Shown here: positions 617-50,955 of the stretch, piece after piece
Numbering within the stretch: position 1 is the first letter of the stretch
Layout of the letters: each line of letters starts with the position of its first letter
Source of the DNA: Blepharisma stoltei ATCC 30299
Taxonomy: Eukaryota; Protista; Ciliophora
Reading direction: 5' to 3'
Length of the DNA stretch: 64,000 nt
Assembly (NCBI GenBank): GCA_965603825.1
Contig: CBFDEM010000037.1
Span: 434,001-498,000 of the forward strand
Made by a program: the position numbers and the translations under genes
Notes under the pieces: model-generated
Told to the model about the DNA's origin: nothing
Database searches by the model: none
Seen by the model: only the letters and a program-made list of their open reading frames with translations

Positions 617-3600
617 TTACTCAGGATGTTTATTTTCTAAGCTACACTCTGATGCGCTCTGTGATGTTTCCAGATCTCCATCATCAATCAAAAATAATTT
701 AATATCAGCTCTAATCGAAAAAATGGAAACTTCTTTATGGAGTTTGAATTTGAAAAATCCAGGCCTATAATTTTCAATCAAATTTTTAGTGGCTTCACTT
801 ACAGCAATTTTCCCTGATATGCCATTGCTTTCCATTTTATTTGCGATTAATACATCCCTCCCGTATATATCGTATCTTACAATATTAGTCCCAGCTATCC
901 CTCCTATAATATTTCCTGTATGTATGCCAATTCTCATATTTAACTCTGTAAAATGCTGGCAATTAAATTCATTAATAATTTCTACCATTGAAATTGCGAA
1001 ATTAATGAGATTGAAGCACTCTTCTCCTGGATTTCTTCCTTCTTCACCCTTGTATCCCATAGCAACATAGCAGTCTCCAATAGTGTGTACTTTGTATATA
1101 TTAAATTCTACACATCTTCTATCGAACTGACAGAAAAGCTCATATAGCATGTCAAGAACGCTCTCAGGACTTCTGTTTGAAGACCATGCTGTAAAGCCAA
1201 CAATATCGGCATACAAGAGAGTGACATCTTTTAAAAAGTCAGTCTGAGCAATCTCTTCTTTTAAGTTTTTATATACATGTGGAGGCATCATTTGAGTTAG
1301 TAAATTTTCAGTTTTTTCTAATTCTCTATTCGCATAGTCTTTAAAGGCAAAAATAATTCGTAAGTTTTTTTCTTTATAATAATTTATATGGATGGTGATC
1401 AATGTGATGGATAACAAAACTACTATATATGGCAGTTTATTGTTCGTGTCAAGAAACGATATAAATATAATTGAGGGAATAGACTCAGCTAAAATAGAGA
1501 TGATCAAACGCTTGAAAAATAGGGTTGAGCCAAGTGCTAAAAGGAGTATGTTGAAGGTTAAATAAGAAAATTTTATGAATTCATGAGCGTTTGTATCTAG
1601 AATTCAAAAATTTATAGTTGCAAATGTAACACAAATATAAAAAATTTGTAAAATTCATGGGAATGATCAATGCAGATAAATTCATTTTAATGTTACTGCT
1701 ATTGACATAAAAAGAATTGATAAAGCAAATAGCATGACTGAAAAGTATAAACATCCAGTATCAGATTCATCAGTGCTTATAAAATGCCCTATCTTTACTA
1801 AAAACATAATAAAATTGCATAAAGAACTTACAATCAATACACAATAAATGCATATTGAATTATTTTCCATCACTTGACTTCTGAAAAGTTTCTCTTTTTC
1901 TCCTTCTTTGCACTTAAATGAAAAGCATTTAATGGGTTCAATTATATCACTTTCTCTTCTCTCAAATAGTTCAGAAGGATCCAGTAGATCAAAATTTTGG
2001 ATCATCAAAGATCTTTTCTTCGAGTCCATGCTGTATTGTTTTTCCATAAAACTACTTTTTGAGAGAGTTAAACTGATTGCATTTCTAAGAGGAGAGGAAA
2101 CATATAAGCTAGGAGATAATGGAGGAGATCGATTCAGATCTGTTATTTCTTTCTCTTTGACAGTAAAAACGTTTATTAGCCCTTTTCCTTTGGCATCAAC
2201 TTTTTTAAGGCAAAAAGAAAATTCATTTTTATCTTCTATTAAGTTGAAAGAATCTTCAGATATTTGTATTGAATTTATTTCGACGTTAGTTGTTGCCATT
2301 CTACTTGCAGTGTTTACAGTATCCCCAACTAATGAAAACTGAGGCTTATGAAATCCTACCACTCCAGCATGAACAGGCCCGCTGTGCAATCCGATTTTTA
2401 CTTTCAAATGTTCACCGTTTTTTAATTTTATATTTTTAATTGCTTTTAATATACTCATTCCCATTTCAATTCCTCTTCGAACATGACATACTGAGGCTAT
2501 ATTAACATCCAACTCAGTTTCATTATCTTTTATTCCAGCACAAGCCATATAAGTTTTCCCCACCGTCTCGACTTTAGTGACCCCAACAATTTCACATATA
2601 TGGTCAAACTGCCTATAAATATTATCTAAAAGGGCTACTAATTCATTAGCTGTATAAATCTCCACAATTTCATCAAAATTATAAATATCGCAAAACAGCA
2701 CTGAAACGATTCCTTGGTCCTCAGCTATATATCTAACCCCATTTTTTACTCTGTTTTTAACAAACCTAGGCAAAATACAGCTTAAAACTTGTTTAGATTT
2801 TTCTACCTCTGCTTCAACTTTTTTGATTAAAATAAATTTTTCCCTCCTGTTCATCTCGATTTTATATCCTACAATTGCTGAAGAAATCCAAATTGAAAAT
2901 AAAATAATTGTATATTGAGTTCCACTAAAAAATACTGCTAAAGTGCTATTTTCTGAAATCGGAGGTGAGCTAGCCTCGATAAATGATATAGCTGAAGCAG
3001 CAACGCACACTGCAAAGGATAGCATTAATGAGTTAAAATAGTCTGCACAAGCAGCAATAAATAAAATTACAGGTCAACTTATCATAACTTCAACAACATA
3101 AATCCTGCATACGAATGAGCCGATAAAAAGCAGCAAAGCTTCATAATAATTCAGAAACATCATAAATAGCTTTAAACGTGACGCGAAAAAAGGTGTTCAG
3201 GAAAATACCATAAAAATAAAATATATAGGCAAATAAATAACTGAAAAAAGTTTGAATTGTTTGCCTCCGTAATTACTGTATCATACTAAAGAAGACATAA
3301 GAGATAGTATACCAATAAAACGGCAAACAATGAACACCCTATAGCTGAATAAAACTTCATATGATTTTTCTGTTTGGTATCCTATTTCTGCACATTCGGA
3401 TTTAAACCTCAGGGTAAATCTATTGAAATTAAATGCATTAATGTCGCCTTTTTTACTGAAATCGCTACTCTCTTTGTATATTTCACCAAGTTTTCCTATG
3501 TAATTTTCAATCCATGCCTTAGATTCGAAAAATAAATTTAGGATCATTGTAAGTTTAGTAAGAAAAAAAGGGTTACAAATCCGGCATAAGTAAATAGGCA

Positions 3601-6600
3601 CAAAGCAAATTAGTGGTACAAAGAAAATCTGCAAAAATGCTACTGGAGCTGAATTCAGAATATCTAATATTCCATATCTTGGATAATGACTTGACCAAGA
3701 AGTTGCTTCTAGTGTTATAACCATAAGCAAAACAGACACTAATAAAGATAAAATAGTGTATCTCGTATATGAATTTATTTTTGGAATAAAATATAATAGC
3801 ACCGCTCCATATGCATTTAATAGCACCTGTATTGATGACAGCTCTCTATTTTCTGTAAAACCCTTATTATTGATTATTTCTAATGGATTGTTGAATACGA
3901 ATATAATAGATGCACATAATAATGACAATATAATCATAAAAATCAATCTTTTAACTGTGATTAATTTTCTATAAGAAGCCATCGAATAAATTTCTGAAAA
4001 TTTCAGAATTTCAACCCTACTAAAATCTTTATCAAATATGCCAAATATCAATAATGGAATTACAAGACAAATAAGATAGTGAAAGAGCATTAAATCCAAA
4101 TCAATCAAAGGGTCTCCTGCAGTATTTTCAATTCAAGTGTAAAAAAATAGCAAAAATGCAGAAATCAGGCTTCCGAAAAATAAAATAAATATTGCGTTGA
4201 TTATTCTAATATTAAATATTCTCCCTTCAAATAGCAATAAATCTTGAAGCTGAGAAAATTTTCTGATTGATATTTGCGCGGCATTTGATGCTGATTTTCC
4301 TTTTTTCCCATTAATTCCAACACCAATATGTGCTTGCTTTATCATTCCAATATCACTGCTCCCATCACCTATCGCCAGAAAAGTCGGTTTATAAGAAAAA
4401 TTATTTTTCAAAAATTTTGCAACCCGTGATTTATCATTTGGGCTTAGTGAATGAAAGCACACACAATTTGCTGCACATAAAAGTGCTGAAAAATATTTCC
4501 TATTTTCTTCTGTACTGAGACCATAATTAATGCCGCTTGAATCTACAGATAAAATAAAATACACTGAATTGGGGTTAAAATGCATACTCAATGGAGACTC
4601 CATATTCACATTTGCAAATTTGCTCAAAAAAGGATGGATTTTTATTTGATGCTTTAATTGTGTTGGGTTTATATAAAAATCATCGTTCAACGACACTATA
4701 GAACATTCACTTTTAATGAGAGGGGCTAAAGGCTCACTATTGCAATCTTGAGATTCAAAAGACATTACACTTGGAAGATTTGAGTGGCTGGGTTTTGAGC
4801 TTTCTCTATAATGTATGATATATCTTTTTATATGATCGTTTAGTACTGATCTTGCTTCTAGTTCATTATTGACTTCTGTAAGTCGAGCTATGCCCACGTT
4901 TATTTCAACTAATCCGGCACTAACCGCTGTCGAAAGGGTAATTTCTTCATTTTCTCCACTCATCAGTCAGAATTTTATTCCAGCTTTCTTAAATAAATCA
5001 ATAGTGTCTTTTGTGTCATCTGCAATTTTGTCTTCAATTGTTGCAGCTCCCAAATAAGTTAAATCTTTTTCTAGCTCTTCAAATAAATTTTCGATTTTTC
5101 CATCACTATTTACAGGAGAAAGCTTTGCATTTTCATATTTGAAATTAAAATTAGCAATATCATTGCTTGATAGTATTTTATACCCTGCAAAAATTAATCT
5201 TTTACCAATAAGATTATTACAGTAAAGAGTCTCTTCAATGTTTAATTTTTCTTCTTGTGAAAGGCTGAATATATCAAACATTGGCTCTTTTGATCCTTTT
5301 ACATATAATATCATTGTTAATTGAGCAATATCCGAAATAATGATTCTGAACTTATTTGATTTTGAGCCAGAATATTTATAAGCAATAACTCCATATTCGA
5401 TAAAATTTCCATACGCATTTATAACGCATGATTTTTTATTTCTGCTGATCAGACTTATCCCTAAAATCTTGCTTGTTTCAACTAGAATTTTATCGTCACC
5501 AGATATACTTATGCATTTTCCTGAAGAGTAAGGAAAGACTTGATTACAAAGAGCTAAGCACATGACAAAATGATAGGCTTTTGAGTTTTCACTTGATTTT
5601 TTTTCAAGTTTATTTTTCAAATACTTGAATGAAAAAATATTATCACAGCTTAAATCATTATTAATCTCTTGCACAGTGTCTGCTGGGCCAGCTTTTGTAA
5701 GGGGAGAGGTTTCAGATTTGGTATCAGGGGTTAAGAATTTTAAGTTTTCATCTCTTAAATAAATACGGTCCTCGATTATACAAGATGTTACAATAAACTT
5801 ATCTTTTGTTATAGTCCCTGATCTATCAGCTAATATATATTCAATTTGTCCTAAATTGTCTATAGCTTTTTTAGAATTAAATTTAATTTCTTCATTATTT
5901 TTGGTGATTTTTCAGCATTGCAGCCAACGAATTAGAGGTAAAAATATGTAAACCGATAAGGGAATATTTTCATGGAGAATTACAATTAAATATACCAGTA
6001 AATCTCCTGTAGTGTCATTAAAATCTAAGCCAAACCAAAATCTGTTAACAAAAAATGCTGAAATTATCATTAAAAATGATAAAGCAATCATCCAAAAAAT
6101 TCATCCATTCAACCGTTTTTCTAATATTGTTAAACTCCCATAATCGCAAGAAATTGCAGCTGAAGTGAATGAATCTTTTCCTGTATACAAAACAACACCA
6201 AAAATTCAAGAAGTCTCAGTTAGCTGAGATCCTCGAGGAATAAAATTTAATTTAGTTATTTCTGCCAGTTGAGGATTTGCAGCGAGTTTGACAGATCCAT
6301 AAATGTTTTTTTGCTCTGTTTCAGGTACTTTGATTTTCATATTCAGTTTATGGATTTGTGCTGCGGCTTCGTCAACGATTATGGAGTCGAAAAGCAATTG
6401 GGTGTCTTTTATAGACTTTCTTACCTTAATATCTTTACCCCCAGTCACTCCAGTGGAGTCGATACAGCATATGTGCTCCTCTTCTCCTACTGTTAGAATT
6501 AAAATATCGGCAGGACAATATTCTTTATTATTGAGCCAAATTATGTCTCCAACGTTAATATCCTGACTTGCCTTGTAGGCAAAATTATGTCCATTTCATA

Positions 6601-6922
6601 CATAATATAGCTTATTGTTGGATTTTTTATCGTTTTTGTGATTTCTGATGTCTTGATAGGCATTGAAGATAAAGGCAATCAGCAACAAAAAGGGAAAAGG
6701 GAATATCAGAGGCCAGTAAATATTTACATCTGATTGGGAAATAGCCAGAATGAGAGGGTTAATAAGAAAAATACAGTAGGCGTAGTTCCCAAACAGCTCA
6801 ATGACACTTTTAGGAAGGAATGTAAATAAGTTATAGCGAGAAGTAATAATTTCGTTTCTTGGGAACCCTTTATTCTGATTTTCTCCTTGGCCAGTCACTT
6901 GAATTAATCTCAAGTTTACCAT
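617..6922 (-). CDS. P4-ATPase-like/guanylyl cyclase fusion, copy 1 (~2101 aa)
   Basis: All seven minus-strand track fragments from 6922 to 617 are in one frame separated only by TGA; 6306 nt, ends TAA. N-half is flippase-like (ITSRYNLFTFLPK, ADRSGT, ATIEDK, AIGDGSSD). C-half has two class III cyclase domains (KVETVGKTY...QFSLVGDTVNTASRM; YADIVGFT...HTIGDCY). Confidence 0.93.
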
Positions 6923-7115
6923 TTATTCTTTTTATTGATAGCATTTTAGCATATTCCTTACTATTAGAAGCTTGCCAAATAACAAAATACAGATATTTAG
7001 AAAATCAAAGTATTTAGAACATAAGTCCAATTAATTTCAATACAAAAGGGAGATAGCAATTTATATACAAAATCTTCAACTTAATTATCAGCTCTAAATT
7101 AATCAAAATGTTTTA

Positions 7116-10100
7116 TTACTCAATGTCAATTAAAAATGTTTGTATTTTCGTTTTTATTGACGAAATATCGATTGCTTTATAAGAAGAAAACCCAAATAAG
7201 CCAGGAGAATAATTTTCTATTAAGTTCTTTGTTGCTTCACTAACTGATACTCTTCCTGCTAGTCCATTACTTTCTATTTGGTTTGCTATCAATACATCCT
7301 TTCCATAAATATCATATCTGACTATATTGGTCCCAGTAATTCCTCCTATGATATTTCCGGTGTGAATTCCAATTCTCATGTTCAGCCCACTTCCATGCTC
7401 TTGGTTCATAGCATCTATAACCTCAATCATTGAAGAAGCGAATTTAATGATATTTAAGCACTCTTCCCCTGGATTCCTGTCTAAATCTCCTTTAAAGCTC
7501 ATCGCAACATAGCAGTCTCCAATTGTGTGCACTTTATATACATGATTTTCGACACATTTTTTATCAAACTCACTAAAAAGCTCATAAAGCATGCCTACAA
7601 TGCTATCTGGGCTCCTATTAGAAGATCAGGCTGTGAAACCGACAATGTCAGCATATAAGAGTGTCACTTGAGGCAATGAGTCAGTGGTCGTTATCTCTTC
7701 TTTAAGTCGTTTATATACATGTGGAGGCATCATCTGTGTCAGCAAGTTTTCTGTTTTTTCAAGCTCTTTTTTTGCTAGGTCTTTTAATGCGAAGAACACA
7801 CGGAGATCGCTTTCAACTGTATAGCCAATACAGTTGATGACAACAATGAAGCCTCCAAAAGCTATTAAATGCAGGCAAGTGTCCATTGTATGGTCGATAA
7901 TTATAAGGGGAACTACAACTCCTAGCATCATTAAGCTTGTGATAACAAGGTATTTCATAAATAGACCAGAACAGAGAACTATCAATAAAGCATTGTAGAT
8001 TACATATGAAATTTCCACTGAGTCAAGCTCATTGTTCTCAGTAAATCCTTCTATTATTACTGCACAGATGATAAAAAAGCAAGTTTGTTTAATAAACCAA
8101 GGAAAAGCTTTTGACTTATAGCACTTTTTAGTTGAAATGATAATTCCAATGAATATGAAAGATACTATGAAGAGAAATACTGAAGAGATGATATTAGCGT
8201 CATCATTGCCCTCATTCAGTATGATATATACAATCTTAAAAGCTCCTAAAAATGCATTCGAAACAGCTCCTATTAGAAGTCCTGGATATAAAATAGAGAA
8301 TTTGTTTTCTATCATTTGTATCCTTAATAGCATTTCTTTTTTGTTTTCTTTACAGCTGCATGAAATTAGTTTAACTGGATCTATAATTTCTGTATTTTTC
8401 CTCGCAAAAAGCTGTGAAGGGTCATTTATGTCAAGCTGCAGCATGATTATAGATTTTCTATTGACTTCGCTATTTCTTCGAATTTCGCCTGAGCTAACTT
8501 TCTTCCTAGCAAATGTTCGCGAGTGTATGAGTGGCAGCTGAAGTCCTTCTTTAGCTGGAATTTCAACTCCCGTATCATGAATTTTTCTTTCTTTGACTAA
8601 AAGTGTTTCTATTCACCCTTTTCCTTTTGCTTCCACTCTTGTTTGTGTGAAAATTAAGTCTGACTTCGAATCGACCAATGCATAAGTTTCTTCAGATATC
8701 TGTATGATATTTGGCTCTTTAATTGTAGATGCCATTCTACTTGCCGTATTGACTGTATCTCCAACAAGTGAAAACTGAGGCTTATGGAACCCTACAACTC
8801 CTGCAGTTACAGGGCCACTATGAATTCCAATTTTTACTTTTAATGTTTCTCCATTCCATAGCTTTATCTTTTGTATAGACTTTAAAATGCTTATCCCCAT
8901 CTCTATAGCTCTCCTTGCATGTGACACCGACTGAAAATGAGGATCCAACTCTGCTTCGCAATCTTTTATTCCTGCACAAGCCATATATGTTTTCCCTACT
9001 GTTTCTATTTTTACAACTCCGACCATTTCACATAGATGGTCGAACTTTCTATATACATTGTCTAAAAAAGCTGTGAGCTCTTGAGGGGAATAACCTTCAA
9101 TGATGTCTTCAAAGTTATAAATGTCACAGAAAAGCACAGTCACTATTCCTTGGTCGTCAGCGATGTATCTTGCCCCATCTTTAACTCTTTTCCTAACAAA
9201 ATTGGGGAGTACACATTCCAGGACCTGCTTTGACTTTTCAACCTCGATTTCTACTTTTTTGATCAGGATGAATTTATTTCTGTTGTATTTTTCTGTGAAA
9301 TAGCCGATAAAAGCAGAAGTGAGCCATATTGAGAAATAGACTGTAACAAACTCAAAACTATGGAGAATTACTTCAGAGCTGGAAAGGTCGTCAATGAGCG
9401 ATATTTCGATGATAGCAGATGTAGAGACAAAAATGCACATTATAAATGTCAAGATAAGCGAAAATGCTCAGTCATTGCAAAGACCTATAAGGATTAATGG
9501 AGGCCAAGAATAGTATAAAGCATGAAGATAGACTTTAAAAGCAAAAGTAGTTATTAGAAATGCAACACCTTCGTATACATTTAATGCAAAAATAAGCTGC
9601 TTTAAATTTCCTTTGAAGTAAGGCAGCCATGATATAAAAATACATGCAAAGTAGACAAATTTATATATCGTGTAATAAATTTGAAACGATATGCTCCCAA
9701 TATCAGCAGCTCATATATAGAGGTTGAAAATAAAGCAAGAAATGAACTGAATCATGATGAGAATTCTATAACTTTTTATTTTTTCATCAAATTTTTCTGT
9801 TTGGTATTCAGATTCTGTAAGCTCTGAGGCAAATCTTAAAATTCACTTGTTTATTTTGAACATATCATGATGGTTTTTCTTTCTATAGTCTTTGCTTTCC
9901 TTGTAAACTTCATCTAATCTTTCATTAAAATAAGAAACTCTTGTTTGATCTTCATAATATGCTTTACCTTTAAAATTATTTCTTAAAAAGTCAACAAAGC
10001 TTGGGAAGAACAATATGCTATATGTTTTTAAGGCATAGTTAAAGATTGCAGTTATTAGAGTTACAAAAATGATGAGTAAAATTCCCATTGGGGATATATT

Positions 10101-13100
10101 AATCATTTGCAAAATCCCAAATTTTTCAAAAACTATAGTTCAAGAAGTAAGTTCTAAAATTATAATTGCAGAAATAATAAAAAAAACGTAGGCAAGAATT
10201 GTGAATTTGCTATAAGAATAAGATTCGATAATCATGTATAGTAAAAATGAAAAGCACATACATAAATATAAAATTGTTGAGTTTAAATCAAAATTTTCAG
10301 TAAACCCCGAATCATTTCATATTCCTATATTCATTATTATAAAAAAGCATATTAAAGAATATGCCAATGCTTTTGCAAATACATAAAAGAGCTTCTTTGT
10401 TGTTAATAAAAGTCTGTATAGACCTGCTCTATATACTTCTGGATACGTAAAAATGCGATTTTCATCAATATCTACATCAAAAATTCCAATAATAATCAAA
10501 GGAATTCCTGTGATCACTAAATTATACATCGACAACAACCAGGATTCAAAAATACTATTCGCAGCAGTTGACTTTATAAGTGAATAAAAAAAGGCCAAAA
10601 ATGAATAAAATGCAGATTTAAATAAAATCATCATCACTATATTGCTGGTTCTAACATAATTCCAGTGCCCTTCTATTAAAACTAAATTTTTCAGTAGAGA
10701 AAATTTCTTTATAGCATAATGTCCAGAATTTAGCGAGCAAAGGCCTTTTGATCCAGTTATTTCAACTCCAACATGTGCTGAATTTATCATCCCAGCATCA
10801 CTTGAGCTATCTCCAATCGCTAGGAATATTGGCTTATATGAAAAATTGTATCTAAGTAAGCTTGCAATTCTTGTTTTATCATTGGGCTTGAGTGAATGAA
10901 AGCAAACACTATGTGCTGCACAAAGAAGAGAGCAGAATATTTTTCTGTTTTCTTCTGAGCTAAGTGCATAATCAATTCCATTACTATCAATTGATAGCAC
11001 GAAGTAAACTGAATCAGGGTTAAAACTCATCTTTAGAGGTGATGAAATACTGAATGATGCTATTTGTGTCAAAAATGGATGGAATTTTTTAGTTTTCATG
11101 TACTCTTGAGACCTTCTCCTTCCATATTGAAAAAATGATTGAGGACTTTCATCTCCATCAAGCAAAACTGGGTCAGTTTTGGAATTAGGCATTTTCTTAA
11201 TGTCACAATTTAAAAATGTTCCAGAAACAGCGATTTGGTTGCTTATGGCTGTTTTCTCAGTGTTGCAATGGAGAATATGATTTTTCACATGATTAATCAT
11301 ATCAATAGCGCAGTCTAGCTGAGAATTATATCCTCCAATTCTTGCTATATTGGATTCAATTTCAAAAATTTCTGCAGCCACTGCTGTTGTTAAAGTGATT
11401 TCTTCATCTTCTCCACTCATCAGCCAAAACTTTATACCTCCTTCAGACAATAATGAAATTGCGTTTTTCGTGCCATTTGAGATTTGATCTTCAATAGTCA
11501 CACATCCTAGATAGCTTATTCCTTGTTCCAATTCTTCAAGAATGTGCTCAATTCTTCCATCTCGATTAATTGGGGATAATTTCGCATTATTATAAGCAAA
11601 ATTAAAAGAGTCCATTTCATCCTTTGCAAGTTTTTTATATCCCATAAAAATATGCCTTTTTCCCCATTGGTTATAATTAAACAGATTTTCTTCAACATTA
11701 AGTTTTTCTTCATCAGTCAAATTATAAATATCAAACATTTTGCTTTTGGGCCCTTTCACATAAAGAATAGCTTCCCCTGTTTTATGGCTCCCTACAATAA
11801 TTCTGTATTTTCTTGAATCACCTGTATAATGATGAAATGCTATTATAGGGAACTCTATAATATTTCCTAATATATCAACTAGGCAAGTATCATGGGCTTT
11901 AGATAGCAATGAGACCCCTAAATCTTTACTGGTATCCATTAAAATTCGGTCATCAGCACTCATATATATCATTTTTTCAGTTGATTTAGGAAAGACTTGG
12001 TTGCAAATGGCCATACACATTACAAAGTTATATACTGGGCTTTCATCGTTGATCCCTTTTATGAAGTCATTTTTTAAAGATTTGAATGATAGTTTTTCGT
12101 TTGTAGGGTTTATGCATGTAATTTCATTATTTTTATCTTGCTCTTTAGGAGTGCAGGTTTCTGGAATTTCAGTTTGTATAGTATCAGTTCACTCATAAAC
12201 TGTTTCTCCTATGCAGCAAGCAGTGATCTTCAGCTTATTTTTACTAATTGTTCCAGCTCTATCAGCTAAAATAATTTCCACTTGTCCTAAGTCTTCACTC
12301 GCTTTAGAAGAACGAACACAAATCCCTTCATATTTTTTAGAAATTTTCCAGCTTTGGAAAAATCGGATAACTGGTAGTGTTACATAAAGCATCACAGGAA
12401 TATGCTTACGGTCAAGGATAAGTAAATTAAGAAAAAGACTCATATATGTATCATCATAGTCTAATCCATAGCTATAGATACTTACAAAAAATCCAGACAA
12501 TACCATTCCAAATAGCAAGAGAGTCATTCAAAAAACTCACCTGTTGAGTTTCTTTTCTAGAGTTGATAATTTTTTAGGTTTACAAGACAGGCCTCCAATA
12601 GTTGATGCTTCAGTCCCTGTGTAAACTACAACCCCAAAAATTCATGAGGTTTCTATTAGCTGAGATCCCAATTGTATCAAATTATATATATCAATTTCAG
12701 TTTGATTTGGGCATGTGCTAAGCTTGATCGATCCATAGAACTCTCCTTGGGAAGATTCTGGGACTTTTATTTTTGCATTAAGTTTTGGAATTTGTGCTGC
12801 TATCTCTTCAATGTCGAGCTTTGTCATTCGCTTGCTTTCATCAATATCATTTGTATCGAAATTTAATTGAGTTTCTCTGACTGGCTTTTTAATTATGATA
12901 TCAGTGCCTCCAATAGCTTTTGTTGCGTCAATATAACAGATTTTATCATTTTCACTGACATAAAGCACAAGAATGTCAGCAGGTGCTATTTCATTTATTT
13001 TTAGTAAAATAATGTCGCCAACTTCAATGTCTTCGAGCTTTTTATTAGAAAATTTATATCCGTCTCATATATCATATTCTTTATTATTTGTAGCTGAGTC

Positions 13101-13427
13101 ATTCCTATGATGTTTTATATCTTGAATAGCATCAAAAATAAAAGTTGTAAACAATAGTAGGAGAAATGGTATCATAAACATCCAGCTGAAGCTTGAGTAT
13201 GGATCAAGGAATATCTGAGCTATAGGGTCAATTAAAAAAATATAATATGCGTAACTTCTGAATTGGTCTCTGATGTTTAAGGGGATAAAATTTAAAAGTG
13301 TATATCGTGATGTTACAATTTTATTCTTTGCATACCCTTTCATGGAGATTGAATTGCTTCCTTGTATGTGAATATACCTTCACCTCTCTTCTTTTTTTTC
13401 TAAGGATGATATTGGCTTAAAAGACAT
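7116..13427 (-). CDS. P4-ATPase-like/guanylyl cyclase fusion, copy 2 (~2103 aa)
   Basis: ATG at 13427 (MSFKPISSLEKKER-W-RYIHIQG). Single frame with TGA=W to TAA at 7116; 6312 nt. Motifs ADRAGT, MSGED, AIGDSSSD, KIETVGKTY, QFSLVGDTVNTASRM, YADIVGFT, HTIGDCY. Confidence 0.93.
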
Positions 13428-13919
13428 TATTTTAATCTTCAATAATTTTATATAAAACTCAAAAAAAGAAATTAGCCATTCTGCTCTAATTTTAACATTT
13501 ACTTTCAATAGAAAATGCCTTTGAATTTCGAGGTAACACATTTAAATCCAAAACTATGCTCCCTATACCATGAAAATCAACCCCTGCGAGAACAAATATG
13601 AAAAACATTTTCTTCATAATAAGATTAAGATTAAAATCAAGTTAAATAACTCAATCGATCTTATATGTAAGAATTTTCTGGAAAAGCGGTTACAGATTTT
13701 CTTCTAAAACAATTATTAAAGATGCAAACAAGTTTTAATCGAGATATTACTACAGTGCGAAAGAAGCTATTTGCAAGAATTTTAAACAAAATTTATTAAG
13801 AAATGATTTGGCCATATTCAAAAATAAGAGTGAAAATATATTTATTGCTTTAGGGGTATAAATTTACTAATAAGTATTTTTAAATGTATAATTATTTAAA
13901 ATAAGCAATTGTCATTATC

Positions 13920-16900
13920 TTAATCAAGATCCAGTCAAAATGCATTTATCTTCGATTTTATTGCTTGAATTGGTATTTCTTTATGAAAAGTAAAGTTATA
14001 TAGTTCAGGCTTATACCCTTCAATCAAGCTTTTAACAGCTTCACTTACAAGTATTTTCCCACCTGCCCCATTGCTTTCAATTTTATTTGCTATAAGTACG
14101 TCTTTTCCATATATATCATATCGAACTATATTAGTTCCAGCAATTCCTCCTATAATATTTCCTGTATGTATCCCAATCCTCATATTCAGTTTTGAATTAT
14201 TAATTGCATTCACTTTTTCAATTATTTCTACCATAGACTCTGCAAATCTTATGACCTTTAAACACTCTTCTCCTGGGTTTCTTTCTATGTCTCCATTAAA
14301 TCCCATAGCTACATAGCAATCTCCTATGGTGTGAACTTTATAGACTTTATGCTCCACACATTTCATGTCAAACTTGCTAAAAAGCTCATAAAGCATCCCA
14401 ACAATGTTATCTGGGGTTCTCTGTGATGATCATTCTGTAAAACCTACAATATCTGCATACAATAAGGTGACTTGGCTTAAAGAATCAGTGGTGGTGGTCT
14501 CTTCTTTTAAATTATTATAGACATGAGGCGGCATCATTTGCTTTAGCAAGCTCTCTGTTTTTTCAAGCTCTTTTTTAGCAAAATCTTCTAACGCATAATT
14601 AAACCTCATCGTTTTTTCAGTAAAATAAGAAATTGATAGCATAGCGAACTCAAATGATATAATGGATATCAAATATATATATTTATTAGCAGAACCACCA
14701 ATGAGCATTTGGTCAAGAGCTATAAAAATTGTAGCTAGAATTGTTGTGCTTATAATGTTTTTGAAAAATGAACAGATGCATTGAGAAGATAATAAAGTGC
14801 AATATAACAGATACGAAACTTCTACAATTTCAACTTCATCTTTTCGATTTAATCTCATTATAAGAACTAAAATTATTGGAGTCAAGTAGCCAACTTGCAT
14901 AATTCATGAAATGTACTTTGATTTGTAAATCCTTGCAAATATCCTTCAAAGTGAAATGTACCAAATAAGAACTGATGTAAAATAAATCGCTGAAATGATA
15001 TTATAGTTGCTATTATCTGACAGCTGGATAAGAATGAATTTCATAATTCCTAACAATAAGCTGCATATAAAGGCTGTTAAAATTCTGATTTTTAGCATTC
15101 ATCGGCTGTGCTCTATTATGTGAATCCTCAGGCATCTTTCTTTATTAGATTCGCGACATGAAAAAGGATGAAATTTTATAGGGTCAATTTTGTCAGTATT
15201 TCTTCTTTTATATAGGAGAGATTGGTCATAAACTCCAAGAGTTGTCATAATGGACTGCTTTCGGGCCTCTGAAGTAAATAATGAGTTTCTTTTTTCGACT
15301 GAATTTAAAGTTGATTGCCTTCCTGCTGATGGAATGACAATTGAATTTCTCTTTCCGTCAGCTGGAGTTAATGTTGGCATTTTTTTGGCGTCAGGAGATA
15401 ATGCAATTGATTTCCTCCTAACCCCTGTGACAGTTGCGTGCCTCCTTCTAGGCTCCTTTCCAGTTGCAACTGATGGTCTTCTTTCAGGGCTTCATGCATG
15501 CTCTACCATAGTTCTTTTTCTAACAGAATGCATTGAGTTTGTCATTACAAAATCAGGATCACCAAAGCTAAATAAAGGCAAATCATTTAATTCGCTTTCT
15601 CTTACTGTATATGCAGTAATGAAACCTTTCCCTTTTGCTTCAACCTGGCGTTTTGCAAATGCAAAATCATCTTTTTCTTCTATACTATTATAGGTTTCTT
15701 CAGAAATTTGTATTGTATTTGGATCTTGGTTAGTTGAAGACATTCTGCTTGCAGTATTAACAGTGTCTCCAACAAGCGAAAACTGAGGCTTATGAAACCC
15801 CACAACTCCTGCCGTTACAGGCCCACTGTGGATGCCAACTTTCACTTGTAAAGACCCTCCACTTTTTAATTTGATTTTTTCAGCTGCTTTAATCATCGCC
15901 AAACCCATTTCCACAGCTCTTCTTGCATGAGGGACAGATTGGATTATTCAATCCAGTTCAGCTTCGCTGTCTTTAATGCCAGCGCAGGCCATATAAGTTT
16001 TTCCTACAGTTTCCACCTTAGTAACCCCTATTATCTCACAAAGGTTATCAAATTGCCTATAAACATTGTCTAAAAATGCAGTAAGCTCATATAAAGGATA
16101 AGCATCCACTATATCTTCAAAGTTGTGGATATCGCAAAATAGCACAGTAGCTGTTCCTTGATCGTCAGCGATATATCTTGCGCCATCTTTAACCCTTTTT
16201 CTAACAAAATCAGGCAAGACGCAGTCTAAAACTTGTTTGGATTTTTCTACTTCATTTTCTACTTTTTTTAATAGGATGAATTTTTCTCTGTTATACCTTT
16301 CAACTGAATAGCCAATTATAGCTGAAGAAATTCATATTGCGGAATAAATTATTGTAAATTCTGTTCCTGATATGAAAGCTTCAGTAGATGTAAGGCCATC
16401 CAGATTAGAAGTGTGGATGTAAGCAGAAATACATATGAATACTGAGGCTGATAAGGATGAAAATATGGTTGTGGTCCAATCTGTGCAGGAACCAATAAAA
16501 ATTACAGAAGGCCAGCTTAGATATATGGTGGGAATTTGGAAGCCTAGAACAAATGAGTGAATTATAATCATAATGATATCACAAAGATTCATTAATAATG
16601 TGATTGTTTTTCTTTGATATTTAAAATGAGAAATAAAAGAAAATGCAACAAATCCTGCATAAATAAATGCAGTCACAGTAAAAAATGGACCTAGAGTTGT
16701 ATCATCAATTTCATCCGACCATACGTAGATGAAAATAGATAAAATTACAATAAACCGGTACATAATGAATGCTCGATAAATAATCAATGTTTCTTCAATT
16801 TTTTCATTTTGATAGTCTTTTTCAGTAGACTCATCCCAAAATCTCAAAATTCACTTGTTTATTGTAAATTCCTTTTTAATCTTGGTATTTCTTAATTTTT

Positions 16901-19900
16901 TGCTTTCTTTGTAGACTTTGTCAAGTCTTCCATTAAATAAATCTACTCTGGATTTTGCTTCAAAAAACAATTTTCCATTAAACTTACTTCTAATAAAATC
17001 AATGAATCCTGGGTAAAACATTATTTCATAGCATTTTGTTGCATAATTTACTATTAGACAGATCAGTGGAATAAAGAAAAACTGGCAAAAAAGCAATGGA
17101 GAAGTGTTAGTCATTTCTAAATTTCCAAACATATGAGAACTCGGTACTTCTGACATTATTTCTAGATATACTATTAGCGAGATAATAGAAATGATATATC
17201 CAATAATGCTAATAAAGCTGTAAGAGTAAGTTTCCAGTATCAAATATGCAAGAAATGAGCCGTATAGTGATATATGCATTACCAATGACATATATGCACC
17301 ATTTTCAGTGTATCCATCGTTATTTAATATTCCACAATAAAGCACCATATAAAAAATCAGCAATGATTGGATAAGAGCTTTTATAGAAATAAGAATCAGC
17401 TTTTTACTTGTAAGAATAAGCTTATGTAGTCCAACATTATGAATTTCAGGAAATTTTGCAATTTGATGGCCTTCTACATCTTCATCAAAAATTCCAATTA
17501 TAATTAAGGGAATTGCCGTTAAAAATCCGTAATAATATCATGTCATCCCAATGCTAAATATTGCGTTTCCGCCAGCCACTTTCACAAAAGTATAGAAAAA
17601 TATGATATAAGTATGCATAAAGCTTGAAAATAAATATATCAAAATAACATTCGAAATCTTTACATAATTTCAATGCCCTTCAAACAAAATCAGATCTTTT
17701 ATTTGCGAAAAGTCCTTAACCGCAATATCTCCTGCATCCGCAGCAAATCCTCATTTTTTACCTTCAATCCCTATTCCAACATGACCTTTTTTAATCATCC
17801 CCACATCGCCTGCGCCATCTCCAATTGTCAAAAAAGTAGGTTTATATGAAAAATTATTTTTCAATAACGAGGCGATTTGTCTTTTATGCCCTGGTAAAAG
17901 TGAATGGAAACAAACGCAATTGGCAGCACTTAGTAAAGCGCAAAATAATTTTCTGTTTTCTTCTGAGCCAAGTTCATGAGTGATACTTCGCGCATCAACA
18001 GATAATACAAAAAAGACAGATTCAGGGTTAAAAGTCATCTTTAGAGGTGAAGATAAATTTATAGTAGTCAGCTGAGCTAAAAATGGATGAATATTATTGA
18101 CTGCTGATTTTTCTCTTCCTATATTCTTTTTTTCTATAATCCCAGATAGCTTTGGGGTTCAATTTTGGTCAATTTCTGATAGATTCGGGACACTTAAAAG
18201 CTTTTGAGAAGAGTGCAAGGGAGCTTTTCCGAATTCTTTTGGAATTGATAAGGGGTTTATATCAGTCATATCTTCACCTACATGCAAAATAAATCTTTTT
18301 ACATGCTCAATCATATCCATATGGCATTCTAAATGCGAAGAATAAGACGCTAATCTTGCTATACTAGCATTTAGATCAAACATATTCGCAGAAATCGCAG
18401 TTGTAAGTGTGATTTCTTCATCATCACCGCTCATAAGCCAAAATTTTATTCCAGCTTGAGTTAAAAGTGATACAGCATTTTTTGTTTTTTTAGAAATTTT
18501 ATCTTCTATTGTAATGCAGCCCAGAAATTTTAACTTTTGCTCCAATGACTCAAAAATGCTTTCAATCCTTCCTTCGCTATTAACTGGTGATCTTTTAGCA
18601 TTTTTATAAGCAAAACTGAAGTACTTAATCTCTTTTTCAGTCAAAACTTTATAGCCCATAAATATCAATCTTTTTCCTAAAAGATTAAAGGTGTATAGGT
18701 TTTCTTCAATGTTAAGCTTGTCTTCATTCGATAAATCAAATAATTCATTCATAGATTCTTTTGTACCTTTTACATATAAAATAGTTTCTTTAGTGCTTTC
18801 ATCAAAAACGATAATTCGGTTTTTCTTGTTTTTTGCTGAGAATGGTCGATATGCAATTATATCTAATACTTTTATATTCCCTAGAATATTAACGAGGCAT
18901 TCTTTATGTGTTCTGCTTACTAATTGAATTCCTAATTGTCCCGCGGTTTCTACAAGAGTTCTATCATCTGCAGATATCGATATGCATTTTCTAGAAATTT
19001 TTGGGAAAAATTGATTGCAAATTGCCATGCACATAATAAAATTGTAAACATCTCCTCTCCTGTTTTGAGAGCCAATCAATTCATTTTTTAAAGTATAAAA
19101 TGATAAATTTTCATTTGATATCCTACGATTTGCGCTATCAATAAGGAAATTCCCTGTATGAAACGGCGATGTATCTGTTTTTTGATCTGGCAATTGAGTT
19201 TTTGTGTTAATGTAAACTGCGTCATTAACCATGCATGATGATATCATCAATTTATTTTTTGTAATAGTTCCAGAGCGGTCTGTTAAAATATATTCAACTT
19301 GGCCAAGCTCGTCAAGAGCTTTACTTGAGTGAAAAGTAACGCCAGGATAGGTTTTTGAGAGTCTCCAGATTTGGATAAACCGAATGATAGGCAAAATCAC
19401 ATATAAAAATATATGGACATGCCTGTTTAAAACAAAAGTCGTTGTTAGAAACAAAGATCGAGAATTATCATCGTACTTTGTGCCATATATAAGTAAATTA
19501 ACTAAAAAGGATGCGATGACAAAACAAAAATATATGGAGCCGATCCACAAAACCCATATATTCAGTTGCTTTTCTATAGTAGAAATTCTATATTTTTCTC
19601 TTAATGATACTGATACAGAAGTTTCATTCCCTGTGTATATTACAACTCCTAAAATTCATGAAGTCTCAATTATATAAGATCACTGCTGAATAAAATTCTC
19701 AGAGCTAATTTCTGTGTGATCTGGGTTTATACTCATCTTAAAAGTTCCTTTTATATCTTTGGATGAAGAATCGGGGATTTTTATTTTTCCATTTATGCGG
19801 CCTAAAATTGTTGACGCTTCATCAATATCAATAGTATCAAATAGCCTTTGTACATCTTTTATCGGCTTCTTTACTTTAATATCTGTGCCTCCAATAAACC

Positions 19901-20408
19901 CAGACTTTTCAACGTAGCACTCTTTCTCATTTTCTCCAATGCAAATAATAAGAATATCTGCTGGTGCATAATCGTTCTCATTCAGTAAAATTATATCTCC
20001 TACACAAATATTTTCACTTTTTGTCTGTCTAAATTGTAGCCCATCTCATATTTCAAATATTTTTTCATTTACTTTCTTATCATTTTTATGATTTCTTATA
20101 TCTCTATAAGCATCAAACATAAAAGTAAATATTAAAAGAAGAGCTATAGGCAGTATTGATGTTCAGTCATAAGAATTGGGATTTTCAATTAATTGTGAAA
20201 TTGGGTCTATTAGATATCAGTAATAAGCGTAATTTCGAAATTGGTCACGGATATTTTTTGGGAAGAAATTCAGGAATGTATATCGATACGTTGTTATTTG
20301 GTTTTTTTGGTAACCTTTATTTGGATTTTTGGAGTTTCCAAGGAGATGGATGTATCTTCAGTTTTCGTTTTTCTTTTTATCTGGATCTAGATTTGAACTC
20401 AATGACAT
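13920..20408 (-). CDS. P4-ATPase-like/guanylyl cyclase fusion, copy 3 (~2162 aa)
   Basis: ATG at 20408 (MSLSSNLDPDKKKNEN-W-RYIHL). Single frame with TGA=W; ends ...NAF-W-LDLD-TAA at 13920; 6489 nt. Motifs TDRSGT, MSGDD, TIGDGAGD and the same two cyclase domains. Confidence 0.92.
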
Positions 20409-20904
20409 TGATATTATAGATTAAAGCCAAATATTTATATTCGTGATTTTGAGATATGGAAACTCCCATATGCTAACTTATTTATAAAAAGGATGAAAAT
20501 AAATTCAGCATGTGATATATTTTAGAAAATATAGAAGAGTTAGGAGCTAATCATAATTTTTAACGATATTGGATGAAGAAAAATATTTTTTCTCTTTAAG
20601 TTATATAAGACATGATGCATGTTTTTATGTTTTTAAAATAAGTATTTTTGATATGGCTTTAGGCAATTTGCAATTTTTAGAGAATGATGTTTATATTCAT
20701 AATCTGCTTATGTGAGAGTAACGCATTTGGCCGAATTACGAGTATATTATTTTTCGTCATAAAAAAAAAGCATTAGGTTTACCAATAATATTACGCATTT
20801 TTATCTGATTTAGGTCATATGATAGATTCAAATTAAGCTTTAAATATATATACGAAAATCTTGTTTGAAATAATTATTTTAATTTTATTATATTGAAGAG
20901 CAGC

Positions 20905-22254: not shown

Positions 22255-22316
22255 AATTTAGTTTATTCCTCTCAATTGCTAACATTGATTAATGAGCATT
22301 AAGTGTTTATGATGCC

Positions 22317-23765
22317 ATGAAATTCTTTGATAAAATGCAAGCTCTTGAAAATGAAGAATTCATAAAGAATGATAACAACCTTTCCAATTCCTTAGAAGAA
22401 CTCTCCTCGTTCAGAGAACTAATTAAATCCGATCCACAATTTATTAATCTTCGTGACAGCCGTCTCGGTTCCACTCCTCTTATTTCCTCAGTGATCTCGA
22501 ATAACTTTAAAAAAATAGAATTTCTCTTGCTTTCTGGAGCAAACCCAAATATCCCAAATGACTTGGGAGAAACCCCTCTGCATATAGCCGCTGATAATTT
22601 CGACTATCAAACTGCAAAAATTTTATTAAAATATAGTGCAGACCCTAAAATCGCAAATCTGGAAGGCGAAACACCACTACACAATGCAACATATAGAGGA
22701 GACGACAAAATTGTTAATCTTTTGCTACAAAATGATGCAGATCCGAATTCCTTGACTACTCAGCTGGGTCAGTCTCCATTACATATAGCGGCATCAAACG
22801 GCCATTTAGAGATTATTAAGCTTCTTCTTTCACATGGTGCTGATCCAGATATAAAGGACAAACAAGGAGATTCTGCGCTGAATTTAGCTAAAAATAAAAA
22901 AATCAAACAAATTTTGCAAGACTGGAGTGAAGAAGTGAAATATGACGCAAATACAGGGCTTTGAGAAATAAGAGAAGCCAGACCAAGTGAAGAAGATATA
23001 TCAAGTAGACTCTCATTACAGCTGCAGTCATCAATTTCTTCAGCTGTTATGAGTCCTACTGAAAAAGTCCAGTCAACTTCTTTATCTCCCTTTGATAAGC
23101 ATCTTAAATCATGTGGGACAGCTGATACAACATTAAGAATGAATCAAGGGTCAACATCACTACCAGGAAGTCATGAAATTTCAATTAATGCAAAAGATAA
23201 CGACAAACTTTACCAATTTTTAACAAACATTAAGCTCGATATTTATTTTCCAAACTTAGTAAATGCTGGTTTTGATGATTTTGAAAGCTTGATTTCTCAA
23301 ATGAATACTCCTTTGCCAATAACGGCAGATATGCTTGATAGAACAGGAATAACGAAGCCTGGCCACCAGAAAAGAATCCTTATTATGATTGAAAAAGTCA
23401 AAAACTCCCCTGACGATTTTTTTAATAATTGGAATGTTGATGAAAACGTTTTAACTGAATCCATTTGATGGAAATGCTGCATATTTCAGCAAACAGAAAG
23501 GGCTAATTTATCACTAAAAGATATGCTAGAGTCTTTGAACCTAAGCTTTTTACTTGAAAATTTTTATGAAGTTGGATATGAGGAATTAGAATTTTTGGTT
23601 GAGCAGATGAGCTCAGAGCTTGTGATTACTGACAAATTATTAAAAGAAGAAATAGGTATCAAAGAGCCTAAGCATAGAAAAGTTATTTTAAAAAAGCTTA
23701 AAAATATAAGTAAGCAAACAAAGAAGAGTCATCTACAAGCTTCAATCAATTGCTGTGTGTTTTAA
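22317..23765 (+). CDS. Ankyrin-repeat + tandem SAM domain protein with C-terminal CaaX (~482 aa)
   Basis: Three track ORFs join in frame through TGA at 22962 and 23466. Four to five ANK repeats (GETPLHIAA), two SAM-like domains (GITKPGHQKRIL; IGIKEPKHRKVIL), ends CCVF-TAA. Confidence 0.85.
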
Positions 23766-24155: not shown

Positions 24156-25586
24156 ATGACCACTAGAAGTGTGAATGTGATAGTTGAGGATTTTTTGAAT
24201 CAAATAGGCTGAGGAAAGTATCAAAATATCATGGCATTGCAATGCGGACTTGTAAAGATAATTTAGGCATGAACGACGACTCAAATGTGAGAAGTTTTAA
24301 TTGGCCTCCTTTTGGGCTTAGTTGCAGACGACTGAAACTTAAGCATTCAAATGGAAGGCTATTTAGCTACATCAATGCAACTAGGAATCATGATGGGTTC
24401 TTATATATGGTGTTATCTCAGCGACAGATTTGGGAGAATGTTTTCTTTCAAGAAAAGTGCAGTTTTACTAACTCTTACAAGTTTTTTATTGATATTTTCT
24501 CCTGAATATTATTCCTTTCTCGTTTTCCTCTTTTTTATGGGATTTTCTATTGGTGGTGAATTGACTGTAGGAGGGGCAGTATTTTCAGAGTTTTGCCCAC
24601 CTAAAGATATCAATAAATTAGCAAGTCTATCATTTACTTGGGGAGTTGGAGGAGTATTTGCTGCTTTAATTGGAATATTTTGCACTGAACAGAATTTTCT
24701 TCCAATTACTTCATGAAGAATTATGATAGCAATTGCATTTTTATATGAATTTTGCATAATGTGTTTTAGATTCAAAATGGACGAAACACCATTTTATTTG
24801 GGTTGCTCTGGAAATATAGACAAGGCTGAAAAAATAATAGAGAAAATTGCGAAGACTAATAACTATAATTTACAAAAGCCGCTAGTTTTACAAACTCATA
24901 TAGAGTATGGAGAAAATAACAAAAAGAGTATTTTGGGTTTATTAAAATTATTATTTTCTGAAAAATACACAAAAAATAGCATCTTTTTTGCCTTTATTTA
25001 CTTTTTTCTTGCTAGTGGATATACAAATATGCTATACTTTATGCCTTTATTCTTAGATGGGTATTCTTTAACCGAAAGATATTTAATTATCATGCTTCAA
25101 CAAATGTGCGCAATACCTGGGACTATTGTTTCATCTTATTTATGCAAATCAAGCTTAGGAAGTAAGCATACCCTATCAATTGGGATCTTATTTTCGGCTA
25201 TATTTTGCATTTTATTTTATATGGCTAATGAATTTGCTACAGTAAAATTTATTTAGATTTTAACTTTTACTTCTCTGTTGATTTTGGTAATTATGCTTGC
25301 ATATGGCACTCTTTATATGATTACTCCCGAGTCTTATCCAATAGAAATAAAAAGCACAGGCTGCGGATGGTCTAATGCATGTGGAAGAACGGGAGGATTG
25401 TTAACTCCTATTGCTACTGGGTGGCTCTTGAGCATGAATAATGGCAAACCAATAGTTTTGGCTTTATGTTCCCTGTATTTTTTGATTTCTGGCATTAGTT
25501 CATTTTTTATTCAAGAATCAAAAATGCTAAATAAAGGAAGTCTATTTATTTATGAAAAAATTGATATTTCAATGCAGCCAAATTAA
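24156..25586 (+). CDS. MFS transporter, SV2/SVOP-like (2 introns)
   Basis: ATG 24156. IG(W)GKYQ N-terminus, LSDRFGR motif A, GFSIGG, FSEFCP, DETP, ITPESYPIEIKSTGCG...GRTGG. Needs the 15-nt introns at 24252-24266 and 25242-25256 and TGA=W. Confidence 0.88.
24252..24266 (+). other. 15-nt spliceosomal intron
   Basis: gtaaagataatttag. Contains an in-frame TAG; removal restores the MFS ORF; A at -6. Confidence 0.9.
25242..25256 (+). other. 15-nt spliceosomal intron
   Basis: gtaaaatttatttag. In-frame TAG; removal joins the last MFS exon; A at -6. Confidence 0.9.
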
Positions 25587-38423: not shown

Positions 38424-38577
38424 TCATTTGAAATTTGTTCTTTATTAATTAAATTAACTGGAAATATGTAGCGTGTATACTTTATATAATTCTTAGATTT
38501 ATCACAATCTATCTGTTAAATTATTATGCCAAATGCCTTAATAAATCAGTTGAGATATTTCAATATAATTGTTAAAT

Positions 38578-43806: not shown

Positions 43807-43911
43807 TTTATAAATAATTTAATTGAAAATCATGTTATTTATAATCTTAGCATTTTATATAAATCTTTTTATGAATATTTTTGAAGCATTTAATATTAAT
43901 ATAATTCATTT

Positions 43912-46900: not shown

Positions 46901-47025
46901 TATTCTGTCTCTTTATTGTATGAAGTTGGCTGACTAGCTCTTGGAAATTGAGTTGAGGGCGGATTTTGACCTGCTCTAGAAGAAGGATTCCGAAGGCTGG
47001 CTGTCTGATATGACCGATTTGCCAT
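43912..47025 (-). CDS. Q/N/P/S low-complexity protein with C-terminal KH-like and tandem WWE domains (~1037 aa)
   Basis: The 161-aa and 861-aa track ORFs join in frame via TGA at 46540. WWE1 WTFMKDDGKFEPYS...IENAY...RTVRR; WWE2 WYWQDDNRRGWKPY...IEAAY...YLIDL...QYN...RKVRR. Confidence 0.85.
44790..44925 (-). repeat. 27-bp coding tandem repeat, ~5 copies (SNPGFQQ[PS/SG])
   Basis: Repeated ttgctggaaaccaggattgct(g) unit on the + strand. Confidence 0.9.
45505..45835 (-). repeat. 24-bp (8-aa) degenerate coding repeats, INQP[F/I/L/T]Sxx, including a near-exact 48-bp duplication
   Basis: Recurrent ggctgatt(g/a)at unit; NQPFSTPSNQPLSPPI occurs twice. Confidence 0.85.
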
Positions 47026-50915: not shown

Positions 50916-50955
50916 GGGAATATTAATGAATTTGTTAAAAATAGCTAGAAATATA

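What the first reader, a model, noticed from the sequence alone, without database searches (positions are those of the whole stretch)
617..20408. Tandem array of three giant flippase-like/guanylyl cyclase fusion genes
Seen: three head-to-tail, apparently intronless 6.3-6.5 kb genes separated by only ~190 and ~490 bp. Each has a P4-ATPase-like half, TM block, cyclase 1, TM block and cyclase 2. Cyclase cores are nearly identical while TM and linker regions are strongly diverged, consistent with old duplicates kept under selection. Established: this architecture is the alveolate-type GC known from Paramecium, Tetrahymena, Plasmodium and Toxoplasma. Inference: a locally expanded cGMP sensor cluster with a shared output and diversified input domains, possibly feeding ciliary or photophobic signalling. 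It is invisible under standard-code annotation.
Basis: partly seen in the sequence, partly recalled or inferred. Interest (0 to 1): 0.8.

Follow-up and report, generated by a model that had tools for sequence, protein, structure and literature searches.

The report
Three ciliate flippase-cyclase genes in tandem
These are three intact, very old neighbouring copies of a known ciliate cGMP-making membrane enzyme whose attached lipid-pump half has lost its pumping motifs; they are 3 of about 39 such genes in Blepharisma, so the cluster is ordinary, but the count corrects a 2026 review that says this species has one.

Summary
Confirmed: three head-to-tail minus-strand ORFs (2101, ~2103, 2162 aa; TGA=Trp), each a P4-ATPase-like half plus 6TM-C1-6TM-C2. 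The genome is Blepharisma stoltei; all three proteins are already in public collections. They are alveolate P4-ATPase/guanylyl cyclase fusions (P4GC): all six cyclase residues I scored are intact, with the GTP-type Glu. The pump half is degenerate (10-12 of 22 key residues; DKTGT is DR[S/A]GT, the DGET glutamate is lost) though the fold is kept. And the array is one of 7 in a 39-gene family (Stentor has 38). Copies are 44-50% identical, cyclase domains 67-73% (not 'nearly identical'), with saturated dS. Strain SNPs in G2's cyclase half show strong purifying selection (29 synonymous: 4 nonsynonymous). Best reading: active cyclases with a non-pumping pseudo-flippase scaffold or regulator, as proposed for Plasmodium GC-beta. 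Nothing supports a photophobic role. A transcript across the ATPase-cyclase junction was not shown. Modest news: 39 genes against the published 'one', about three quarters pump-degenerate. The scan noted sister genes elsewhere in this genome.

The parts
617..6922 (-). G1, P4GC gene, 2101 aa, 13 TGA-Trp codons
   Evidence: identical to P0011
3548..6871 (-). G1 pseudo-P4-ATPase half (DRSGT at 5827; TGGK in place of DGET; SGE; GDGSSD; PLSV)
2156..2719 (-). G1 cyclase C1 (Glu of KVETV, Ser of QFSL, Asn/Arg of NTASR)
698..1231 (-). G1 cyclase C2 (two metal-binding Asp: ADIVG, GDCY)
6923..7115 (.). 193-bp AT-rich spacer between G2 and G1
7116..13427 (-). G2, P4GC gene, 2103 aa from the homologous Met (public model starts at 13541, 2141 aa); DRAGT at 12263, SGE, GDSSSD, PVML
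   Evidence: folds
8592..9149 (-). G2 cyclase C1; every listed strain SNP in 8600-9500 (23) is synonymous
7128..7679 (-). G2 cyclase C2
13428..13919 (.). 492-bp spacer between G3 and G2; no depth in the two bins lying inside it in RNA-like runs; second-strain DNA contigs enter it from both genes
13920..20408 (-). G3, P4GC gene, 2162 aa, 19 TGA-Trp; DRSGT at 19280; TM4 proline lost (HIFL); long C1b linker; 70% paralogue (P0009) that I place on contig C39
15603..16160 (-). G3 cyclase C1
13932..14483 (-). G3 cyclase C2

Best explanation
Three functional P4GC genes of Blepharisma stoltei, made by ancient tandem duplication inside a large ciliate clade whose flippase half has become a pseudo-enzyme. 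Shown: one 22-helix membrane protein per gene; C1 supplies the base-selecting Glu/Ser and the transition-state Asn/Arg, C2 the two metal-binding Asp (the inverted alveolate arrangement); the pump half keeps its fold and the phosphoacceptor Asp but lacks the DGET Glu, the DKTG Lys/Thr, the TGD Thr, the GDGxND Asn and the PISL motif. Inferred: C1 and C2 pair into one active site that makes cGMP for PKG or cyclic-nucleotide-gated channels; the pump half no longer runs a phosphorylation-dephosphorylation cycle or flips lipid, and serves as a CDC50-binding targeting scaffold and probably a conformational regulator of the cyclase. The three copies are kept as separately regulated or localised isoforms.
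For: Architecture and folds. Cyclase residues 6/6 in all three; pump residues 10, 10 and 12 of 22 against 21-22 in the canonical paralogues, Stentor SteCoe_25265, Vitrella and Polarella (motif roles from PMC6592433). G1-G3 plus one dispersed paralogue form a clade with support 1.0 in whole-protein, ATPase-half and cyclase-half trees. ATPase-half root-to-tip length 2.3 against 0.9-1.1 for canonical copies. dS saturated, dN 0.19-0.23 in cyclases and 0.27-0.72 in pump domains, longest shared exact DNA 23-26 nt: old, no recent conversion. Second-strain SNPs in 8600-9947: 29 syn, 4 nonsyn, pN/pS about 0.04-0.05, p=3e-16. RNA-like contigs cover parts of both halves of G2 and G3's C2 but not the spacer. 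About 10 CDC50 genes exist. A scaffold or regulator role is already proposed for degenerate P4GCs (PMC13466520).
Against: No activity was measured. The phosphoacceptor Asp is kept in all four clade members and most degenerate paralogues, so residual phosphorylation is possible; in Plasmodium GC-alpha and Toxoplasma that Asp is essential (PMC7858053; PMC13466520). RNA contigs leave 9514-10570, the junction, uncovered; their depth is low (2-15) and the runs are only guessed to be RNA. G1 expression was not tested. Strain-level selection on the pump half was not measured (few of its SNPs were listed).
Confidence: 0.72

Rival explanations
1. The pump half is still a slow or one-way ATPase switch: the kept Asp is phosphorylated or binds Mg-ATP, and without the DGET Glu it dwells in an E2P-like state that gates the cyclase.
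For: Asp of DR[S/A]GT, the P-domain Lys and the first GD Asp are kept in G1-G3 and P0009 at about 50% overall divergence, with a shared Lys-to-Arg change. The G2 model matches E2P structures (TM 0.76-0.80) better than E1 ones (0.5-0.7).
Against: TGD is SGE in G1, G2 and P0009; the GDGxND Asn and the CCR Arg are lost. Related Stentor genes replace the Asp itself with Asn or Gly. A preference of AlphaFold models for E2P-like states would give the same match (my knowledge; not controlled here).
Confidence: 0.15
2. The copies are functionally redundant dosage duplicates; membrane and pump divergence is relaxed constraint, not input diversification.
For: The same gradient (cyclases most conserved, membrane blocks least) appears in every paralogue pair tested, tandem or not.
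Against: All three have kept intact 6.3-6.5 kb frames through synonymous saturation; G2 is under strong purifying selection between strains; G3 differs by a long C1b insert and loss of the TM4 proline, the insert shared with its 70% paralogue.
Confidence: 0.25
3. The array is a dedicated photophobic or ciliary-reversal cGMP module.
For: A Ca2+/calmodulin-sensitive GC is in Paramecium ciliary membrane (PMC9608856); cGMP has been implicated in Blepharisma and Stentor photoresponses (own knowledge; only a citing reference was found).
Against: No light-sensing domain; 36 other P4GCs are equal candidates; neighbours (adenylate kinase-like, ankyrin, MFS-like transporter, HMG-CoA synthase) are unrelated.
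Confidence: 0.05
4. Misassembly or pseudogenes.
For: No single contig spans the stretch tested; the middle of the spacer was not bridged in the listed pieces.
Against: Copies are only 44-50% identical, so they cannot be collapsed or duplicated reads; frames are intact; second-strain contigs run from G3 into the spacer (13635-14166) and from the spacer into G2 (12532-13495); SNPs are mostly synonymous.
Confidence: 0.01

Closest known systems
Alveolate P4-ATPase/guanylyl cyclase fusion (P4GC): Paramecium and Tetrahymena GCs, Plasmodium GC-alpha/beta, Toxoplasma TgATPaseP-GC (PMC13466520, PMC6592433, PMC7858053)
   Same: Pump-like N-terminal half with 10 helices, two 6-helix blocks, inverted C1/C2, Glu-type base selection; C1 Ser as in Tetrahymena homologues.
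   Different: Shorter (about 2100 aa against 2700-3500 in Vitrella, Perkinsus, Tetrahymena, Eimeria hits); pump motifs degenerate, unlike GC-alpha and TgGC; 39 paralogues rather than 1-2.
Degenerate-pump P4GCs: Plasmodium GC-beta, Tetrahymena, Cryptosporidium (PMC13466520 Table 2)
   Same: Loss of the DGET Glu and other pump motifs with fold retained and cyclase intact.
   Different: Those also lose the phosphoacceptor Asp; G1-G3 keep it, in a DR[S/A]GT form not seen in any other row of my 105-sequence alignment.
Stentor coeruleus P4GC expansion, 38 genes (bioRxiv 10.1101/168187)
   Same: Same family size; Stentor genes fall in both the canonical and the degenerate clade.
   Different: No Stentor orthologue of the G1-G3 clade among the 9 Stentor proteins retrieved; that paper did not score pump motifs or tandem arrays in the passages I read.
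P4-ATPase flippases (Drs2, Dnf1, ATP8B1) and membrane adenylyl cyclases (AC5, AC8, AC9)
   Same: Folds of the two halves.
   Different: Pump motifs lost; cyclase halves inverted and GTP-type.

Membership tests
P4GC (alveolate flippase-guanylyl cyclase fusion) | N-terminal P4-ATPase-like module with A, N, P domains and 10 helices | tested here: met
   Pfam PF16212/PF16209; G2 model TM 0.76-0.80 to P4-ATPases
P4GC (alveolate flippase-guanylyl cyclase fusion) | 6TM-C1-6TM-C2 cyclase module in the same reading frame | tested here: met
   Single ORFs; model matches AC9/AC5/AC8
P4GC (alveolate flippase-guanylyl cyclase fusion) | Inverted catalytic halves: C1 carries base and transition-state residues, C2 the two metal Asp | tested here: met
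   KxETV, QFSL, NTASR in C1; ADIVG, GDCY in C2; definition in PMC6592433
P4GC (alveolate flippase-guanylyl cyclase fusion) | GTP-selecting Glu (not Lys) with a small partner residue (not Asp) | tested here: met
   Glu/Ser in all three; Ser also in Tetrahymena and Stentor, Ala in Vitrella and Eimeria
P4GC (alveolate flippase-guanylyl cyclase fusion) | One transcript and protein across the pump-cyclase junction | tested here: inconclusive
   RNA-like contigs lie on both sides in G2 but none covers 9514-10570
P4GC (alveolate flippase-guanylyl cyclase fusion) | Measured guanylyl cyclase activity | not testable with these tools
   Inferred from residues only
Catalytically active P4-ATPase | DKTGT phosphorylation motif | tested here: not met
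   DRSGT, DRAGT, DRSGT; Asp kept
Catalytically active P4-ATPase | A-domain DGET glutamate | tested here: not met
   TGGK, IGGT, IGGT
Catalytically active P4-ATPase | TGD and GDGxND magnesium/hinge motifs | tested here: not met
   SGE/SGE/SGD; GDGSSD/GDSSSD/GDGAGD
Catalytically active P4-ATPase | TM4 PISL lipid gate and N-domain KGA | tested here: not met
   PLSV/PVML/HIFL; KGS/KGP/KGT
Catalytically active P4-ATPase | CDC50 partner | tested here: inconclusive
   About 10 CDC50 genes in the genome; binding not testable

The most novel reading that the evidence does not exclude
The roughly 29 pump-degenerate P4GCs of heterotrich ciliates are a receptor-cyclase repertoire: the dead flippase has been turned into a ligand- or lipid-sensing input module whose membrane groove differs between paralogues, so that each copy (G1-G3 among them, with their DR[S/A]GT site) couples a different membrane cue to cGMP. 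One pump-intact, cyclase-dead paralogue (L019) shows the reciprocal loss.
Probability: 0.2. Interest if true: 0.7.

Novelty: new member of a known kind. Interest (0 to 1): 0.3.

Why it matters
The array itself is ordinary. The census around it is useful. The 2026 family review states that B. stoltei has a single, well-conserved P4GC and left ciliate paralogues out; this genome has 39, about 10 with a near-canonical pump and about 29 without. What the flippase half does in P4GCs is an open question in malaria and Toxoplasma biology, since no ATPase or flippase activity has been shown. One free-living cell that carries pump-intact, pump-degenerate and cyclase-dead versions of a compact 2100-aa protein is a natural series for testing it.

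Tried and rejected
Other genetic codes: only TGA=Trp with TAA/TAG stops gives the three full frames. Recent gene conversion between copies: rejected (dS saturated in C1 and C2, longest exact match 23-26 nt, congruent half-trees). Synteny between this array and the 70% paralogue on C39: not found; the neighbours' best paralogues lie on C44, C55, C18 and C14. Simple hydropathy undercounted helices (13-18), so the models were used. Linder 1999 (PMC1171498) is not held; the Ser partner residue is therefore judged by alignment to Tetrahymena homologues. No paper tying Blepharisma P4GCs to photophobia was found. Four further B. stoltei paralogues came as proteins from the homologue search; the remaining 12 are classified only by domain hits and motif patterns. 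The large representative search was not needed.
Full report
Observation. Six-frame scans under six stop-codon sets show that with TGA read as Trp three minus-strand frames fill 617-20420. G1 is 617-6922 (2101 aa) and G3 13920-20408 (2162 aa). G2's frame opens at 13541, but the Met at 13427 aligns with G3's start and gives 2103 aa. Spacers are 193 and 492 bp. TGA-free pieces hit Guanylate_cyc and PhoLip_ATPase_C, and the genome scan places both cyclase domains and one ATPase C-terminal domain in each gene.

Organism. The assembly is 41.46 Mb in 64 contigs. A paralogue is 100% identical to an NCBI Blepharisma stoltei protein, and the window's three proteins are themselves in the collection (P0008, P0010, P0011). 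This fits the published 41-Mb, UGA=Trp macronuclear genome with 15-16-nt introns (PMC9942806). The genes are therefore already annotated.

Anatomy. AlphaFold models of G2 gave pLDDT 81.5 for the N-terminal half and 84.8 for the C-terminal half. The first matches Drs2, ATP8B1 and Dnf1 at TM 0.76-0.80, the second membrane adenylyl cyclases. I count 10+6+6 membrane helices. The cyclase residues are complete in all three genes: Glu and Ser for base selection and Asn and Arg for the transition state in C1, two Asp in C2. This is the inverted arrangement described for Toxoplasma (PMC6592433). A GTP substrate is inferred from Glu in place of Lys.

The pump half is degenerate. Of 22 key P4-ATPase residues G1, G2 and G3 keep 10, 10 and 12, against 21-22 in canonical paralogues and in Stentor, Vitrella and Polarella controls. 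DKTGT is DR[S/A]GT, the DGET glutamate is gone, TGD is SGE or SGD, GDGxND has lost its Asn, PISL is PLSV, PVML or HIFL. The phosphoacceptor Asp survives. By established P-type ATPase chemistry a normal pumping cycle is unlikely. That the module is a scaffold or regulator is inference, and the same idea is in the literature for other degenerate P4GCs (PMC13466520).

Family context. The genome has 78 strong cyclase domains in 39 pairs, each next to an ATPase C-terminal hit; 16 genes lie in 7 tandem arrays. All 20 other loci I read are single intact frames of 2060-2140 codons. Exact GDGAND occurs in 9 of the 39 and exact DGETN in 2. With one GDGSND gene, about 10 have a near-canonical pump and about 29 do not; I read 19 of those 29 in full and they score 9-18 of 22. 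About 10 CDC50 genes are present. Stentor has 38 P4GCs (bioRxiv 10.1101/168187), so the expansion is a known heterotrich trait. The 2026 review says B. stoltei has one P4GC, scores its pump at 0.97, and skips ciliate paralogues. That statement does not fit this genome; the gene it used is probably one of the two fully canonical copies (inference).

Evolution. G1-G3 are 44-50% identical; C1 and C2 67-73%, pump catalytic domains 45-64%, membrane blocks 19-45% outside TM1-2; synonymous sites are saturated. They form one clade with a fourth, dispersed gene (P0009, 70% to G3, which I place at C39 about 204-212 kb) in whole-protein, pump-half and cyclase-half trees. So the tandem duplications predate the G3/P0009 split. 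The clade sits in a larger degenerate-pump group that also holds Stentor and environmental genes. No recent conversion is seen.

Reads. One call on 8600-14500. Run X12 is a strain about 3% divergent. Its listed SNPs in 8600-9947 are 29 synonymous and 4 nonsynonymous, all 23 in the C1 region synonymous; pN/pS is 0.04-0.05. Only 40 of 186 differences were listed, so the pump half could not be scored. The only indel is in the spacer, and contigs enter the spacer from both genes, which argues against misassembly. Two RNA-like runs cover C1 and much of the pump half of G2 and G3's C2 at low depth, and not the spacer. Neither covers 9514-10570, so a junction-spanning transcript is not shown. Both show a 71-nt skip in G3's C2 without GT-AG ends, bounded by an ATAT direct repeat. 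Its length and ends resemble the 72-bp, TA-type eliminated sequences and the low-level cryptic excision reported for this species (PMC9942856); a reverse-transcription artefact is also possible.

Mechanism and rivals. Most likely: each gene makes a membrane guanylyl cyclase with one active site at the C1/C2 interface, placed and probably tuned by a non-pumping flippase-fold module bound to CDC50 (0.72). Alternatives for the pump half or the reason for three copies: a slow phospho-switch (0.15), redundant dosage copies (0.25, not exclusive of the main reading), a photophobic module (0.05), artefact (0.01).

Verdict. New members of a known family; the array is one of several and not surprising. 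The useful result is the census and the graded loss of pump motifs, with one reciprocal cyclase-dead copy. Interest 0.3. Limits: 12 of 39 genes were not read in full; no activity, localisation or quantitative expression data. Earlier scan notes on sister genes agree with this reading; I checked three of them in my own alignment.

Noticed in passing
L019:797-7123 (G000:C20, about 422.9-429.2 kb, minus): P4GC with a near-canonical pump (21/22) but a broken cyclase site: NTASRM is KIASGM, QFSL is QFTL, C2 tail also altered. The reciprocal of G1-G3.
   Followed up: partly
window:14111-14181: 71-nt skip in two RNA-like runs, ATAT direct repeat at the ends, no GT-AG; it would frameshift G3's C2. Looks like a cryptic IES-type excision or a template switch. 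A second 111-nt skip (14190-14300) has no such repeat and may come from a paralogue.
   Followed up: partly
window:10354-13585, run X7: Several DNA contigs match G2 and then continue into unlike sequence (near 10360, 12045, 13344, 13403, 13585), as expected if this run holds germline DNA with eliminated sequences inside G2 and the spacer.
   Followed up: no
L015 (C58) and L020 (C53), upstream flanks: This 76%-identical P4GC pair shares its upstream neighbours (78-88% identical pieces), so it is a segmental duplicate. Several other pairs cluster at 68-86% (C39a/C4a, C57/C55, C25 genes with P0002/P0005, G3/P0009), as do an ankyrin gene (69%) and an adenylate kinase-like gene (62%) of this window: a hint of an old large-scale duplication. 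Other pairs showed no shared neighbours within about 3 kb.
   Followed up: partly
L012:843-7046 (C25): One member of the C25 triplet has no TGA codon in 2067 codons, while most paralogues have several.
   Followed up: no
L007 (C9): Most degenerate pump among the B. stoltei copies read (9/22): the phosphoacceptor Asp is Asn; cyclase intact.
   Followed up: partly
G000 C53, C46, C5, C21, C58: Seven weak single cyclase hits (42-56 bits) without an ATPase partner; probably the ion-channel-type cyclases of ciliates.
   Followed up: no
window:3-425 (-), 22293-23765 (+), 24267-25583 (+), 38569-40737 (+), 42472-43818 (-), 43912-47124 (-), 50119-52665 (+): Neighbours: adenylate kinase-like gene (its P-loop region reads GSGKW with a TGA codon and seems to skip the lid, perhaps through tiny introns), ankyrin protein, MFS-like transporter, GAS2-domain protein, HMG-CoA synthase, WWE protein, methyltransferase. 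None is an obvious cGMP gene.
   Followed up: no
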